From Octopus sinensis (Eukaryota), in assembly GCF_006345805.1 (NCBI RefSeq), contig NC_043004.1, forward strand, positions 78,492,001-78,556,000: a DNA stretch of 64,000 bases, in the 5' to 3' direction. Shown here one piece after another: positions 9,613-42,444 of the stretch. Position 1 is the first letter of the stretch. Every line of letters starts with the position of its first letter. The position numbers were made by a program, and so were the translations under genes. The notes beneath the pieces are model-generated. The model did no database searches and was not told the origin of the DNA. It saw nothing but the letters and a program-made list of their open reading frames with translations.

Positions 9613-9649
9613 TATAAATGTGTTAACATGTTAAAGAAATGTTAGTCAC
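9613..9649 (+). promoter_or_regulatory. TATA box plus initiator, putative core promoter of peptide gene A
   Basis: TATAAAT at 9613 with the A of TTAGTC at 9644 (31 nt spacing); ATTGG (reverse CCAAT) just upstream. Confidence 0.55.
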
Positions 9650-9745
9650 AGTGAAAAACCTTTTCAAAGTCCACTGTGAGATTTTCTGATTTTTTGCAGC
9701 TGTAACCAATATTACAGTCCAGCTCTGAGAATTGTGCTGTTTGTT
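9644..9745 (+). other. Putative non-coding exon 1 of peptide gene A
   Basis: Unique sequence from the Inr to a consensus GTAAGT donor at 9746-9751; no ATG-initiated ORF; linkage to exon 2 is inferred. Confidence 0.5.
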
Positions 9746-10089
9746 GTAAGTACGTTTCCTATTTTTATAAAACTGAAATACAAATCTTTTGAATACATTA
9801 TTCTAAAATATTATTTAAATGGTGTTCGCTTTGAGAGATCCTCTCATATAAATAGACGGGGCTAAAAGTACAGACATGTTATTTAAGTAATGCCACATGA
9901 GGTGTCATTAACAGGTATAAAGAAATGAATGTAGTAATTTTGTTTGTTTTGGAAACGTAAAGGAAATAGGGAACTGCAGACATACTTGTTTATACACATG
10001 TTCTTTGACTTGTTTGAGTCATTTGACTATGGCCATGCTGGAGCACTGCCTATACAAAAAATACACAAAGCATAAACATAGACTTACAC

Positions 10090-10330
10090 ATATATATTTC
10101 TTTACTACCCACAAGGGGCTAAACACAGAGAGGACAAACAAGGACAGACACACGGATTAAGTCGATTACATCGACGCCAGTGCGTAACTGGTACTTAATT
10201 TATCGACCCCGAAAGGATGAAAGGCAGAGTCGACCTCGGCGGAATTTGAACTCAGAACGTAACGGCAGACGAAATACAGCTACGCATTTCGCCCGGCGTG
10301 GTAACGTTTCTGCCAGCTCGCCGCCTTACA
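10090..10330 (-). mobile_element. tRNA-derived SINE
   Basis: Reverse of ggcggcgagctggcagaaacg...gagttcaaattccgccgaggtcgac family; many copies in the window. Confidence 0.85.
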
Positions 10331-10919
10331 CATATAAATAGACTTACACATATAAATACGAATCACACATATACATATACACAATGTTACGGAGATATAC
10401 ACATTCAACAACTGTACATCCAGCGCTGGATTAACCATTAAGCAAAATAAGCACGTGCTTAAAGCATCAAGGGAAGACGGGGCACCACAGAAATAATAAA
10501 TGGTTTACGGCACAAAAGAAATAACTTCAGACTTGCTAAAATAATATCCAGGATGCCTTTAACTCTGCTAAGTATAGAAGCAGATATGTTGCGAAATATT
10601 GGTTCTGAGCATCTTTGCAATTGAAAGACTTTGTAATTAAAGAATTAGGAGAAAACTTCAAATATAAATAAAGTGGAAGTATACAAAAATAAACATTATT
10701 TTCCATCTGTTTTCTTTTGTTTAATTCTGTAAAATAAGAAATAATTATTTAATGGTTGATAATTCTATCATTTATTCTTTTACTTGTTTTAGTAATTTCA
10801 CTGCGGCCATGCTGGAGCACCGTCTTGCTTATATTTTCAATTACATGTTTATGAGGGTAGCGTAATCTTTTAAGTGTTCAGGGCATCCATGGATCTTAAC
10901 CTGGTTCTATTCTTTTATT

Positions 10920-11295
10920 CTTTTAATCTTTTATTTGTTTCAGTCATTTGACTGTGGCCACGCTGGAGCACCACCTTTAGTCGAACAAATTGACGCCCAG
11001 GACTTATTCTTTGTAAGCCTAGTACTTATTCTATCGGTATCTTTTGCCGAACCGCTAGATTACAGGGATGTAAACACACCAACATCGGTTGTTAAGCGAT
11101 GGTGGGGGGACAAACACAAACACACACACATATATGTATGTATGTATGTATGTAAGACGGGCTTCTTTCAGTTTCCGTCTACCAAATCCACTCACAAAGC
11201 TTTGGTCGGCCAGAGGCTATAGTAGAAGACACTTGTCCAAAGTGCCATGCAGTGGAATGAACAATCTACTTATCACACAGCCACTCCTGCGCCTA
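10920..11295 (-). mobile_element. tRNA-derived SINE, second family
   Basis: Reverse of ggcgcaggagtggctgtg...gacggaaactgaaagaagcccg...aaatgactgaaac; partial copies at 8020-8130, 20340-20510, 38815-39020, 42920-43300, 52835-53010, 55190-55400. Confidence 0.85.
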
Positions 11296-11774
11296 TATAT
11301 ATATATAATATATATATATATATATATATATATATAAAAATGTGTATTATAAAAGGTTTATTCAAGTTTTCTCCCTCTCATTTGTAGAATGTAAGCCTGA
11401 CACTAACAAAATGGCAAGGCCCTTCTGTGTAAGGGTCAAGACAGTTCTTGGGGTTTGTGAGTATGCGAATTGCACGACGTGTGCTTCTGTGAAAGTGTGT
11501 GTACGCATGCATGTGTGTTCGTGTGTGTGTGTTTGTGTGTGTTTTTGTGTGTGTGTGTGTGCGTGTGTACATGTGTGTGTGTTTGTGTGTTTGTGCGTGT
11601 GTGTGTGTGTGTACGTGCGTGTGCGTGTGTGTGTGTGTGTGTTTGATGTGTGTTTGTAAGAGTGTGCGTGTTTTTTTGTGTATGTGCGCGTGCGTGTGTC
11701 TACAAAATTCTTTATATTATCAGGAAATAGAAAACCAATCATCTCAAAATGTTCAACGGATCGATTCTATTATC

Positions 11775-12360
11775 TTCCTTCCTTCCTTCCTTCCTTCCTC
11801 CCTCCCTCCTTCCCTTCGTTCCATCTGTCTTTCCGTCTTTCTTCCTTCCGTTTTTCCTTTCTTTTCTTTCTTTTTCTTTTTGCTCTTTCTTTCATTCTTT
11901 TTTTCTTTCTTTCGTTTTTACTTTGCTTTGTTTTTTTCTCTCTCTTTTGTTTTCTTCCTTCCTTCCCTCCTTCCTTCTTTCCTTCCCTCCTTTCTTTCTT
12001 CCTTCCTTTCTTTCTTCCTTCCTTTCTTCCTTCCTTTCCACCTTCCTTTCTTTCTTTCTTCCTTCCTTCCTTCCTTCCTTCCTTCCTTCCTTCCTTCCCA
12101 CGTTCCTTCCTTCCTTCCTTTCTCCCCACCTTCGTTCGTTCGTTCGTTCGTTCCTTTCTTTCTTCCTTCCTTCCTTCCTTCCTTCCCACGTTCCTTCCTT
12201 CCTTCCTTTCTCCCCACCGTCGTTCGTTCGTTCGTTCCTTCCTTCCTTTTTGCTCTTTCTTTTGTTTTTTTCGTTCTCTGTCACTCTTGTATACTTTTTG
12301 CATTCTTATTGCCTTCTTTCCTTTCTGTTTTCCTTCCTACCCTTTTCTCTTCTTTCTTTA
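11775..12360. repeat. (CCTT)n/(CTTT)n polypyrimidine tract
   Basis: Direct inspection. Confidence 0.9.
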
Positions 12361-40199: not shown

Positions 40200-40692
40200 T
40201 ATATATAAAAGTCAAGTTGTGTGTCTGTCTCCTACGATTTAGATTCCTAACTACTCCTACATTTTGCGGTGCAGTTTAACCAAAAGCGGGTATCTTATAG
40301 TCGTGATTCATATCGAGCCCTTCTGGGTATTAGCGCGCGTCTACGATGAGTCTACGATTTTTAAAATAATTTACCATTATTTTTTCCATTTTAATGCATT
40401 TTTTGCTATTATATAAGGGAGGTAACTTTCTAAAAATGTCTACGATGAGTCTACGATTTTAAAAATAATTTACCATTATTTTTTCCATTTTAATGCATTT
40501 TTCGCTATTATATAAGGGAAGTAACTCTCTAAAAATGTCTACAATGTGTCAACAATCTTTAAAAAAAATTACCATCATTTTTTTCCCATTTTTAATGCAT
40601 TTTTTTTGCTATTTTTTGGCTATAACTCTCTAAATATGCTTATATAGTTATTTCCTTTACAAACCCGAGCAACGCCGGGTGATACTGCTAGT
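40200..40692 (+). mobile_element. Non-autonomous Helitron-like element with internal about 105-bp tandem repeats
   Basis: tatataaaagtcaagttgtgtgtctgtc 5' end; gagcaacgccgggtgatactgCTAG 3' end; embedded in (TA)n. Confidence 0.65.
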
Positions 40693-40789
40693 ATATATAT
40701 ATATATATATATATATATATATATATATATATATATATATATATATATATATATATATATATATATATATATATATATATTGGTTAGTG

Positions 40790-41470
40790 ACTTCAGGCGT
40801 AAGGCCAGACGGATCCAGAGACGCAGGCTGATATGGAAAAGGAGGTTGTGAAAACTCAAGGGTTCTTGAAACAGAGACTTAACGAGACTTTTGATGAGAA
40901 AGAGGGAGAAGTGGAGACATATGACATAGAGGACCAATGGAAGTTCCAGCAGGACAACCTACTGAGAGCAACAGGCTAACTGTGTGGATGGATCGAAGAC
41001 AAGAGTGACGTGGGTGGTGGAACAGTGACGTTGATAGAACTATAAAAAAAGAGACGGGTCTGGAAAGAATGGAAAAGTGGGGCGGGGTAGCAAAGAATCC
41101 TGTCAGAAGGCTAGACGTCAAGTTTATCTAGCTAGGACAGAAGCAGAAGGGAAGAGGTTTGCTAATGTCCTACAGCGTGAACATCAGAGACTTGAAGTGT
41201 TCCGGATTGTTCGACAGTATGTGGGAGAGAAGTGTGTGCGAATGGATAATTTTGGACAAAAAAGGCGAGGAAAAGTTACAAAGAAAAACTGTTGAATGTG
41301 GAGAATCAATGGGATAAAGAGAGCTGCCCTCACATAAACCCAAAAGAGAGACCGGCTATCCTAGTGGTAGATAAGGCAATTAAAGACATGAAAACGAGGA
41401 AAGACCCAGTCCACCTGGTATCACTGTTGAGATACCCAAATATCCAGTAAGGTAGAATACGGGCTAGTCA
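40790..41470 (+). mobile_element. RTE-type LINE internal fragment
   Basis: TWVVEQ/WWNSDVDRTIKK.RRVWKEWK...ARRQVYLARTEAE, typical of the region between EN and RT; decayed. Confidence 0.5.
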
Positions 41471-41489
41471 CCTGCATAGTTAATCAGGT

Positions 41490-41790
41490 CATATTGACCA
41501 GACCATCGGATGTTGTGCAACGCTAGTCACAATGCGCTTCCTTGCAGTGTTGTAGCTTTCGAAAGATGCCACCCCGCCGTTGTCTAGGTGGGCAGGACAA
41601 CCCTTTCCCCCAGCCGCTCCTGAACAGGACGCCAGTCCATCGCATTGTCAACCATTTACGGCCATGTGGACTGAAGCAACTTTGAATAGACTACCTTGCT
41701 CAAGAACACAATGCAATTCCTATCTGGGAATCGATACCACAAACTTGAAATCGTGTGTACAACACCTTAACCATTAGGCCATGCGCCTTC
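41490..41790 (-). mobile_element. tRNA-derived SINE
   Basis: Reverse of gaaggcgcatggcctaatggttaag ... gtgttcttgagcaagg. Confidence 0.7.
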
Positions 41791-42159
41791 GTAGACACAC
41801 ACACATATCCATATGAAAATTGAAGTATAGACATCAAAAAATAATTCTCTATCTTGATGTATTTAAACCAGTAACAATTTTCTCATTAACATAAAACAAT
41901 ATTCTTGGGAATTTTGGTAAACAAAGCTTTTAAATAATCTTAATTTAAATTAATTGTGTTTCCCAATTATGTAATTAAACATTTAATGTCTGTCTTCATG
42001 AAACAGCTATTGAGCAGAATAAAGTGCGCACTTCATATAAAAATTTATGCTTTTCTGCTAAATAAATACACACACACTGTATATATAGATAAAAATTCAA
42101 TTATTTGAACAAGATGCTTGAATTAATGTTATTTTTGTTAATAAAATATGTATACTTAC

Positions 42160-42359
42160 AAGCAAAAATGCTGTGCAGAAGTTGCAACAAATGGCGTACA
42201 TTTGCAGTGAAATAAATCGGTAATACAAGTTGGGTCTTTTATGCAGTCCGTTGTAGTGAGTGCACATTTAGATGACGGCATTGAGATGAGTTCCACGGGA
42301 TTTATCAGGAACAAAAACATCGACAACACAGCAAACAACATGGCTTCCCTTTTGAACAT
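42160..42359 (-). CDS. Secreted six-cysteine peptide, gene B, coding exon 2
   Basis: Acceptor ttctttacaag at 42365; ATG at 42359; MFKREAMLFAVLSMFLFLINPVEL; same cysteine spacing and same 200-nt coding length as gene A; phase-2 donor TT|GTAAGT at 42159. Confidence 0.88.
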
Positions 42360-42444
42360 TTTCACTTGTAAAGAAGAAGAAATGAAGCACAATCAAGGAA
42401 TTCAGCAGACAAATGAAACATTATAAACACATTTACATTCAATA

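What the first reader, a model, noticed from the sequence alone, without database searches (positions are those of the whole stretch)
9613..42364. Convergent pair of unrecognised secreted six-cysteine peptide genes with a toxin-family signature
Seen: two exons on opposite strands encode collinear 66-codon products with near-identical signal peptides (19 of 24 identical) and the same framework C-x6-C-x5-C-x6-C-x-C-x11-C, but only 10 of 36 non-Cys mature residues are identical. Both have homologous acceptors, a phase-2 donor, homologous last exons and similar poly(A) contexts. Established: a conserved signal with a hypervariable Cys-scaffolded mature region is the hallmark of conotoxin, spider-toxin and defensin families; C-C-C-CxC-C spacing occurs in squash-type knottins, conotoxin framework IX and EGF-like toxins. 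Inference: a lineage-specific cephalopod venom, antimicrobial or signalling peptide family. I do not recognise it as a named gene.
Basis: partly seen in the sequence, partly recalled or inferred. Interest (0 to 1): 0.88.

Follow-up and report, generated by a model that had tools for sequence, protein, structure and literature searches.

The report
Octopus-only secreted cysteine-rich peptide gene pair
Two neighbouring octopus genes facing each other encode small secreted proteins (about 80 residues, 8 or 10 cysteines) of a family seen so far only in Octopus; the genes are real and spliced, but nothing yet shows they are toxins.

Summary
The two exons exist as described: A on the + strand (CDS 18443-18642) and B on the - strand (42359-42160). 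Signal regions match at 19 of 24 residues and both have the framework C-x6-C-x5-C-x6-C-x-C-x11-C.

The products are not six-cysteine peptides. A phase-2 donor joins each exon to a small second coding exon (A 22575-22617; B 34368-34320). That exon adds 13-15 residues ending in CC, giving 80 aa with 8 Cys and 82 aa with 10 Cys.

The window is about 99% identical to Octopus vulgaris chromosome OX597821.1, where a third paralogue lies 41 kb upstream of A. The only relatives among 1.84 billion representative proteins are three uncharacterised Octopus predictions.

There is no Pfam or PDB match. AlphaFold predicts three short helices rather than an EGF or knottin fold, confidently for A only.

The contrast between a conserved signal and a variable mature part also holds at synonymous sites (pS 0.20 against 0.79) and in flanking DNA. 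It therefore marks a mosaic of divergence, not demonstrated diversifying selection.

Best reading: a lineage-restricted family of secreted, disulfide-rich ligands of unknown role. Venom, antimicrobial and signalling roles all stay open. Interest is moderate.

The parts
9700..9745 (+). 5' non-coding exon of gene A (acceptor ttttgcag|C, donor GTT|gtaagt). A TATA-like TTATAAAT lies at 9613.
   Evidence: The O. vulgaris model P0003 splices this exon to 18429 (..LFV|NRN*). In the frame of ATG 18443 the junction forms TAA.
18345..18428 (+). Conserved block upstream of exon A. It holds the 19-mer TTTATAATGTTTCATTTGT (18372-18390), a pyrimidine tract and the acceptor AG (18427-18428). A SINE-like copy lies just upstream at 18186-18344.
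   Evidence: The 19-mer is identical upstream of A, B and the O. vulgaris paralogue C. Alignment. The SINE matches other copies.
18429..18642 (+). Main coding exon of gene A. CDS runs from ATG 18443: signal peptide plus six-Cys region, ending TT|GTAAGT (phase 2).
   Evidence: The O. vulgaris orthologue differs by 2 nt, both nonsynonymous.
22575..22617 (+). Second coding exon of gene A: (L)TSWAVLNQVPTCC followed by a stop. TAG|GTATAA serves as a donor in the O. vulgaris model.
   Evidence: Identical in O. vulgaris. The junction is used in P0005.
24340..24452 (+). 3' untranslated exon of gene A, according to the O. vulgaris model P0005.
   Evidence: Canonical tttcag|C and GAA|gtgggt sites. The 76-aa ORF of P0005 can be rebuilt in the window.
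30036..30068 (+). Start of the last annotated exon of the gene A transcript (3' UTR for the A frame). Its end was not determined.
42160..42359 (-). Main coding exon of gene B (CDS only): signal peptide plus six-Cys region, ending TT|GTAAGT (phase 2). The exon start is uncertain (TTTACAAG|TGAAAATG).
42365..42445 (-). Conserved block upstream of exon B, including the 19-mer at 42427-42409. Tandem SINE-like units follow at 42499-42917.
34320..34368 (-). Second coding exon of gene B: (L)VCSVLLKTQCTCCVW followed by a stop. The acceptor is ctctccgcag|A.
   Evidence: Identical in O. vulgaris locus L002.
34292..34297 (-). AATAAA poly(A) signal of gene B, 23 nt after the stop codon.

Best explanation
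A and B are two functional, convergently oriented paralogues of a small gene cluster. A third copy, C, lies 41 kb upstream of A in O. vulgaris. The family has been seen so far only in the genus Octopus.

Each gene makes a spliced mRNA from non-coding 5' exon(s), a main coding exon and a 43-49 nt second coding exon joined in phase 2. Gene A also has 3' UTR exons.

The product is an 80-82 aa precursor. Its N-terminal signal peptide of about 24-26 residues sends it into the secretory pathway. The remaining 55 or so residues fold into a compact domain held by four disulfides in A and five in B. Six Cys come from the main exon and a terminal CC from the tail exon. The domain is predicted to be three short helices, not an EGF or knottin fold.

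Shown: the exons, the splice junction of A, conservation of the Cys scaffold, restriction of database hits to Octopus, and the lack of any Pfam or PDB relative.

Inferred: secretion, disulfide formation and the fold.

Most likely mode of action (inference): a soluble extracellular ligand that binds a receptor, channel or surface, with the paralogues having diverged in specificity. My split among roles:
- endogenous signalling or chemical communication, about 0.35
- defence or antimicrobial, about 0.2
- salivary or venom, about 0.15-0.2
- other, the remainder

The conserved-5'/diverged-3' pattern is best explained by the two blocks having different ages. Gene conversion or recombination renewed the 5' block (SINE, promoter or acceptor, signal), and this sits on top of purifying selection on the signal and the cysteines. 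Toxin-style diversifying selection is a less good fit.
For: - Exons and framework.
- Tail exons are found only downstream of A and B and are far rarer than chance. They match the tail of O. bimaculoides P0001 (TSGLALGMVPSCCED against TSWAVLNQVPTCC).
- The junction 18642|22575 is present in O. vulgaris P0005. That annotation combined Iso-Seq and RNA-seq transcripts, protein alignments and ab initio predictions (PMC10700109).
- The window matches O. vulgaris OX597821.1 at about 99% in unique DNA.
- Paralogue C has the same upstream block and donor.
- Eight positions are invariant (six Cys, Pro and Phe) although pS is 0.6-0.9 in the mature part.
- Hydrophobic core at residues 6-19, with mean Kyte-Doolittle score 2.9-3.4.
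- Only P0001, P0002 and P0003, all Octopus, were found in 1.84e9 and 5.8e9 protein searches.
- No Pfam hit, no PDB sequence hit and no Foldseek hit.
- AlphaFold on A gives pLDDT 92 with helices at 12-17, 19-26 and 38-49. B gives the same helix layout.
- Mosaic divergence.
- Net charge of the mature parts ranges from -3 to +6.
Against: - No direct transcript reads, tissue data or proteomics were available. The transcript support is second-hand, through two oddly framed O. vulgaris gene models that do not themselves encode A.
- The splice of B is inferred only from homology.
- The signal-peptide cleavage site is not canonical. There are no small residues at -1/-3 in A, and Pro follows the best candidate site. 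SignalP could not be run.
- The AlphaFold result rests on five sequences. Three of five models for A scored 38-55, and B reached only pLDDT 53.
- In A the stop codon lies upstream of two exon junctions, which in some animals marks an mRNA for decay.
- Restriction to Octopus may partly reflect how rarely such short exons are predicted in other cephalopod genomes.
Confidence: 0.7

Rival explanations
1. This is a venom or salivary toxin family of the posterior salivary gland. The mature region is driven apart by diversifying selection against prey targets, as in cone-snail toxin superfamilies.
For: - Conserved signal with a much more variable Cys-scaffolded mature part, between paralogues and between putative orthologues. 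A against P0001 is 21/24 in the signal and 19/43 in the mature part; B against P0002 is 19/24 and 25/43.
- A clustered multigene family.
- Both differences between the window and O. vulgaris in exon A are nonsynonymous and lie in the mature part.
Against: - pN/pS is about 0.5 in both parts, and synonymous sites are saturated in the mature part, so no excess of amino-acid change is shown.
- There is no propeptide or conserved dibasic site.
- Signal and mature parts share one exon.
- The two recent cephalopod venom-gland preprints whose text was searched for cysteine-rich, novel or EGF-like peptides described no such family. A full-text search of the paper library for the signal-peptide sequence and for the accessions found nothing.
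- Only three copies were found, not a large expansion.
[quoted passage not shown] This is weak evidence.
Confidence: 0.15
2. This is an EGF-like growth-factor-type ligand. The six Cys of the main exon would form a 1-3, 2-4, 5-6 EGF fold, as the UniRef name of the paralogue P0002 ('EGF-like domain-containing protein') suggests.
For: - The UniRef name of A0A0L8IDK4.
- Cys spacing with C-x-C and an aromatic or Pro nearby resembles EGF spacing (own knowledge of the EGF consensus).
Against: - No hit to any Pfam EGF model at E<=10 for five family members.
- No PDB sequence hit with the family profile at E<=10, although the PDB holds many EGF domains.
- AlphaFold predicts helices and no beta hairpin for A and B.
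- The C5-C6 loop of 11 residues is longer than the usual 8 (own knowledge).
- The conserved extra CC tail is not part of an EGF domain.
Confidence: 0.1
3. This is a host-defence (antimicrobial or immune) peptide family of skin, mucus or haemocytes.
For: Small, secreted, Cys-rich, clustered, fast-evolving and lineage-restricted, as for many mollusc defence peptides. One example is the MgCRP-I family of Mytilus (PMC4558851).
Against: - The mature parts are not consistently cationic. Net charge runs from -3 (P0001) to +6 (P0002, exon part only).
- No similarity to defensin, big defensin, mytilin or macin families in Pfam.
- No expression or induction data.
Confidence: 0.18
4. These are not protein-coding genes. 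The exons would belong to non-coding or read-through transcripts, and the reading frames would be relics.
For: - The public O. vulgaris annotation does not call the A frame. Its models over these exons are a C+A chimera and an out-of-frame ORF.
- A's stop codon precedes two exon junctions.
- B's acceptor is degraded.
Against: - Intact frames of equal length are present in A, B, C, P0001 and P0002, with all six exon cysteines, the terminal CC, Pro56 and Phe65 kept while other sites are saturated.
- The tail exon stays in the correct phase, with a stop directly or two codons after CC, in three genes.
Confidence: 0.05

Closest known systems
Uncharacterised Octopus predicted proteins: A0A0L8IEN1 and A0A0L8IDK4 (O. 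bimaculoides) and CAI9727362.1 (O. vulgaris)
   Same: True homologues, with E-values from 1e-17 to 1e-36. They share the signal peptide, the Cys framework and the donor, and A0A0L8IEN1 has the same tail ending in CC. A0A0L8IEN1 looks like the orthologue of A and A0A0L8IDK4 like the orthologue of B.
   Different: None has been studied or named. A0A0L8IDK4 stops at the TAA that overlaps the donor (unspliced model). CAI9727362.1 is a chimera of paralogue C with 5' exons of A. A and B of this window are in no protein collection searched.
Cone-snail toxin (conopeptide) gene superfamilies
   Same: A conserved signal sequence with a strongly diverged, Cys-scaffolded mature part, in a multigene family of a mollusc. 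In conopeptides, synonymous rates are also reported to differ between signal and mature parts (own knowledge: Conticello et al. 2001).
   Different: There is no sequence similarity and no propeptide. Signal and mature parts share one exon, whereas in conopeptides they lie on separate exons. The framework C-C-C-CxC-C...CC is not one of the numbered conotoxin frameworks I know. No excess of nonsynonymous change is shown. Venom-gland expression is unknown.
MgCRP-I family of Mytilus galloprovincialis (PMC4558851)
   Same: A lineage-restricted mollusc family of short secreted Cys-rich peptides with a conserved leader and a variable mature part. It has a multi-exon gene with a non-coding first exon and a phase-2 intron.
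   Different: MgCRP-I has the array C-C-CC-C-C, a propeptide with a KR site and four exons with the mature peptide on the last. Here the array is C-C-C-CxC-C plus a terminal CC, there is no propeptide, and the mature part is split over two exons.
EGF-like domain (Pfam PF00008 and relatives; PROSITE EGF)
   Same: Six Cys with a C-x-C doublet and comparable loop lengths. One paralogue carries that automatic name in UniRef.
   Different: No HMM match, a predicted helical secondary structure, a longer last loop and an extra conserved CC tail.

Membership tests
EGF-like domain | Significant match to an EGF profile (Pfam EGF family models) | tested here: not met
   hmmscan against Pfam-A at E<=10 gave no EGF-family hit for A, B, C, P0001 or P0002. 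The family profile against PDB sequences at E<=10 gave no EGF hit.
EGF-like domain | Six Cys spaced C-x(4-7)-C-x(3-5)-C-x(5-10)-C-x-C-x(8-ish)-C | tested here: inconclusive
   The observed pattern is C-x6-C-x5-C-x6-C-x-C-x11-C. The first five spacings fit. The last loop of 11 is longer than the usual 8 (own knowledge of the consensus).
EGF-like domain | Two-stranded beta-hairpin fold with disulfides 1-3, 2-4 and 5-6 | tested here: not met
   AlphaFold2 predicts three helices and no strands for A (pLDDT 92) and the same layout for B (pLDDT 53). Connectivity was not obtainable and the alignment is shallow, so this is a prediction, not a measurement.
Inhibitor cystine knot / knottin (including squash inhibitors and conotoxin framework VI/VII) | Knotted 1-4, 2-5, 3-6 disulfides around a small beta sheet, usually with the array C-C-CC-C-C | tested here: not met
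   There is no adjacent CC in the middle of the array. Predicted secondary structure is helical. No knottin family was found in Pfam. Connectivity itself is not testable with these tools.
Conotoxin framework IX (C-C-C-C-C-C) | Mature peptide with exactly six separated Cys | tested here: not met
   The spliced products have 8 (A) and 10 (B) Cys, with a terminal CC.
Conopeptide-type toxin superfamily organisation | Signal, propeptide with a basic cleavage site, and mature toxin, on separate exons | tested here: not met
   Signal and six-Cys region share one exon. No conserved dibasic site precedes Cys1: A has KK, and B, C, P0001 and P0002 have K, K, K and P.
Conopeptide-type toxin superfamily organisation | Excess of nonsynonymous over synonymous change in the mature part | tested here: not met
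   Nei-Gojobori proportions in the mature part are pN 0.41-0.48 against pS 0.62-0.91 for the three paralogue pairs. Saturation of pS limits the test. Orthologue DNA from other octopods is needed.
Conopeptide-type toxin superfamily organisation | Expression in a venom gland and presence in venom | not testable with these tools
Secretory (signal-peptide) proteins | N-terminal n-region, hydrophobic h-region of 7-15 residues and a c-region with a cleavage site | tested here: inconclusive
   The n-region MYKRE and a 13-14-residue h-region are present in all five members. The c-region NPV.L lacks canonical small -3/-1 residues. SignalP was not available.
MgCRP-I (Mytilus) | Cys array C(X3-6)C(X1-7)CC(X3-4)C(X3-5)C after a KR-terminated propeptide | tested here: not met
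   The array and leader differ.

The most novel reading that the evidence does not exclude
The family would be a previously undescribed, Octopus-specific class of secreted peptides with a new disulfide-stapled three-helix fold. Its mature-coding segment, together with the adjoining intron, would mutate far faster than the adjacent signal-coding segment and its upstream flank, at synonymous sites too. That would be a regional hypermutation or targeted-diversification process of the kind long proposed, but never explained, for cone-snail toxin genes, here with the boundary inside a single exon.
Probability: 0.12. Interest if true: 0.75.

Novelty: new variant of a known kind. Interest (0 to 1): 0.42.

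Why it matters
Octopus genomes hold many lineage-restricted genes whose products are unknown. This is a clean, small example: a three-gene cluster of secreted, disulfide-rich peptides with no detectable relative outside the genus and no match to a known fold.

If the peptides prove to be neuro-endocrine, chemosensory, reproductive or salivary ligands, they would add a new peptide scaffold to cephalopod biology and to peptide pharmacology.

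The sharp boundary of DNA divergence inside one exon gives a compact test case. It lets gene conversion of leader regions be separated from true hypervariability of mature regions, a question usually discussed only for cone snails.

The analysis also shows that the current public O. vulgaris annotation mis-models this locus.

Tried and rejected
- Exact look-ups of the exon ORFs of A and B, and of P0001 and P0002, in the contig index found nothing. O. bimaculoides DNA and any transcript contigs therefore could not be fetched.
- Pfam at E<=10 gave only a meaningless TrbK hit at 0.17-0.5.
- The PDB sequence profile search gave one chance hit, a PHD finger at E 4.2.
- Foldseek against PDB and BFVD gave nothing below E 5.
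- Literature searches on accessions, signal-peptide strings and several keyword sets found no paper describing the family.
- A first candidate for B's tail (35206-35177, LGTLGKCCNE) and another at 41015 were dropped. Neither has an acceptor in the right phase or the 11-residue spacing.
- A search for a homologue of A's 5' exon upstream of B found none.
- A transposon origin was considered and rejected. The coding exons match no repeat in the window. Only the flanking SINE-like copies and a LINE between the genes are repeats.
- Recent concerted evolution of the signal region within this species was considered. It is not supported, because A is closer to P0001 (21/24) than to B (19/24). An older conversion event remains the preferred explanation of the mosaic.

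Full report
**1. What is in the sequence**

A regular-expression scan of all six frames for C-x6-C-x5-C-x6-C-x-C-x11-C gives exactly two hits. One is at 18536-18640 on the + strand and the other at 42266-42162 on the - strand.

- Exon A starts at ATG 18443 and encodes MYKREAMLFTVLSVLLFLINPVHLTPIPTKKC...EEFC.
- Exon B starts at ATG 42359 and encodes MFKREAMLFAVLSMFLFLINPVELISMPSSKC...QHFC.
- Both run 66 codons and then meet TT|GTAAGT. The in-frame TAA overlaps a strong donor.
- Identity is 19/24 in the leader. At non-Cys positions of the rest it is 11/37, or 10/36 without the split Leu codon.

**2. Where the window comes from**

The only database relative found at first was UniRef A0A0L8IEN1 of Octopus bimaculoides (P0001, 82 aa). 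An exhaustive HMMER search of 1.84 billion representative proteins added two more:

- A0A0L8IDK4 of O. bimaculoides (P0002, 67 aa), automatically named 'EGF-like domain-containing protein'
- CAI9727362.1 of O. vulgaris (P0003, 103 aa)

A fourth hit was a repeat artefact.

The locus of P0003 (L001, chromosome OX597821.1) is collinear with window positions 1-28148 at 93-99% identity. Unique DNA around exon A is 99.0-99.4% identical. The window therefore comes from the O. vulgaris / O. sinensis complex.

In O. vulgaris a third paralogue, C, lies 41 kb upstream of A on the same strand, to the left of this window.

**3. Gene structure**

P0001 continues past ..FC with L-TSGLALGMVPSCCED. A tBLASTn search and a frame scan found the equivalent exons in the window:

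- 22575-22617 (+): ccacag|GACG..TGCTGTTAG, giving L-TSWAVLNQVPTCC and a stop
- 34368-34320 (-): ccgcag|AGTG..TGGTAA, giving L-VCSVLLKTQCTCCVW and a stop

The DNA pattern YAG + 1 nt + 11 sense codons + TGYTGY + up to 4 codons + stop occurs only at these two places in the whole window on either strand. Each lies downstream of its main exon and on the same strand. Shuffled sequence gives 0.385 hits, and 0.01 with an equally pyrimidine-rich tract.

The products are therefore 80 aa with 8 Cys (A) and 82 aa with 10 Cys (B), not six-cysteine peptides.

Independent support for the A junction comes from a second O. vulgaris model, P0005 (76 aa). It is an out-of-frame ORF starting at ATG 18601 inside exon A. 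Its sequence crosses 18642|22575 and then 22617|24340 and 24452|30036, all with canonical splice sites. The same ORF can be rebuilt in the window.

P0003 is a chimera of a 5' exon, exon C, the window exon 9700-9745, and the first 12 nt after the acceptor of exon A ('NRN*'). The annotators' transcripts thus use the acceptor at 18428|18429 and the donor at 9745.

With 9745 joined to 18429, a TAA forms across the junction in the frame of ATG 18443. That ATG is then the first possible start.

The O. vulgaris annotation combined Iso-Seq, RNA-seq, PASA/TransDecoder, protein alignments and ab initio predictions (PMC10700109). The models are therefore suggestive of transcription, not proof. I could not obtain read-level evidence.

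B's tail exon is identical in O. vulgaris and is followed by AATAAA 23 nt after the stop. A has no such signal within 680 nt and is spliced onward. The 'similar poly(A) contexts' are not confirmed.

B's acceptor differs as well, TTTACAAG|TG against TTTAG|AACAG in A and C.

**4. The upstream block**

About 75-100 nt before the ATG are conserved in A, B and C. This stretch includes an identical 19-mer, TTTATAATGTTTCATTTGT, where 0.2 matches are expected by chance. It could be the branch-point and pyrimidine region of the acceptor, or a TATA-type promoter about 70 nt before the ATG. Both may be in use. I cannot decide without reads.

A and B, but not C, have a SINE-like element directly upstream.

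**5. Pattern of divergence**

Between A and B the DNA homology runs from 18186 to 18507 at 78% identity. That covers the SINE, the upstream block and the signal codons, and it stops inside the exon.

| Pair | pS / pN, signal part | pS / pN, mature part |
|---|---|---|
| A-B | 0.20 / 0.11 | 0.79 / 0.42 |
| A-C | 0.47 / 0.15 | 0.91 / 0.48 |
| B-C | 0.36 / 0.13 | 0.62 / 0.41 |

These are Nei-Gojobori proportions.

Synonymous sites are as saturated as the rest, and the intron after the donor cannot be aligned. The contrast is a boundary in DNA divergence, not an excess of amino-acid change.

The simplest explanation is that the 5' block shares a more recent ancestor, through gene conversion or recombination between paralogues. 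The 3' block is old and retains only its functional sites: the cysteines, Pro56, Phe65, the splice sites and CC.

The conversion would predate the split from O. bimaculoides, because A is closer to P0001 (21/24) than to B (19/24) in the leader.

Regional hypermutation of the mature segment is the alternative. It needs orthologue DNA to test.

Putative orthologues differ strongly in the mature part (A-P0001 19/43, B-P0002 25/43), so the proteins do evolve fast. The two differences between the window and O. vulgaris in exon A are both nonsynonymous. Two changes prove nothing.

**6. What the protein is**

- The N-terminus has a charged start, a 13-14-residue hydrophobic core and NP, as in a signal peptide. 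The cleavage site is not canonical, and SignalP was not available.
- No Pfam family matches at E<=10.
- No PDB sequence matches the family profile.
- AlphaFold2 on the mature A sequence with its tail (five-sequence alignment) gave pLDDT 92 and pTM 0.75 for the best model, with helices at 12-17, 19-26 and 38-49. Three of the five models scored only 38-55.
- The same run for B gave the same helix layout at pLDDT 53.
- Foldseek found nothing similar in the PDB or BFVD.

The EGF and knottin comparisons are not supported. A helical, four-disulfide mini-protein in which the tail helix and terminal CC belong to the fold is the best current guess, at modest confidence.

Net charge of the mature parts varies from -3 to +6. 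That does not fit a uniformly cationic antimicrobial family.

**7. Function**

Nothing in the sequence fixes the role. I commit to a secreted, disulfide-stabilised extracellular ligand family whose paralogues have diverged in binding specificity. My rough split among roles:

- endogenous signalling or chemical communication, 0.35
- defence, 0.2
- saliva or venom, 0.15-0.2

The venom reading is weakened by several points. There is no propeptide and only a small copy number. No excess of nonsynonymous change is shown. The two venom-gland preprints and the octopod genome/venom-evolution paper I searched described no such family. It is not excluded.

**8. Novelty**

The kind is familiar: a lineage-restricted, clustered family of secreted Cys-rich peptides with a conserved leader. 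Conopeptides and the Mytilus MgCRP-I family are examples.

This particular family has no name, no literature and no recognisable fold. Its Cys array, C-C-C-CxC-C...CC, is split over two exons and is not one I can assign to a described framework.

I rate it a new variant of a known kind, of moderate interest.

Noticed in passing
window 14408-16073 and 16560-17144: A 1.67-kb (ATAC)n array is followed about 490 bp later by its reverse complement, a (TATG)n array of 0.58 kb. Together they form a large inverted pair of tetranucleotide repeats 1.3 kb upstream of exon A.
   Followed up: no
window 25307-30048 (- strand): A LINE-like retroelement lies between the two genes. Its reverse transcriptase (RVT_1, zf-RVT) is split over three ORFs, and there is an ORF1-like protein with a CCHC knuckle. 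It sits at the same site in O. vulgaris at 97.5-98.7% identity.
   Followed up: partly
window 59852-62252 (+ strand): A second retrotransposon fragment carries a partial reverse-transcriptase domain.
   Followed up: partly
window 36652-37113 and 42499-42917; single copy at 18186-18344: SINE-like 184-bp units occur in short tandem arrays of 2.3-2.5 copies. One array lies directly upstream of exon B and a single copy lies upstream of exon A. Paralogue C has none.
   Followed up: partly
window 40339-40604: A 99-bp tandem repeat of 2.7 copies at 91% identity lies in the intron of gene B.
   Followed up: no
L001 28862-29059 (O. vulgaris OX597821.1), about 41 kb to the left of exon A and outside the window: A third family member, C, has the same upstream block and donor (..EFC AT|GTAAGT). 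Its own CC-tail exon was not found in the 41 kb between C and A.
   Followed up: partly
L001 10001-70263 and L002 10001-21748 (O. vulgaris annotation GCA_951406725.2): The public gene models over this locus look wrong. P0003 joins exon C to 5' exons of A and stops 3 nt before A's ATG. P0005 is an out-of-frame ORF starting inside exon A. The 80-aa A frame is not annotated.
   Followed up: yes
window 32075-32395 and 34100-34310 (- strand, downstream of B's stop): There is a long (TAA)n array, and (GGT)n/(AGT)n trinucleotide runs lie just past the poly(A) signal of gene B.
   Followed up: no
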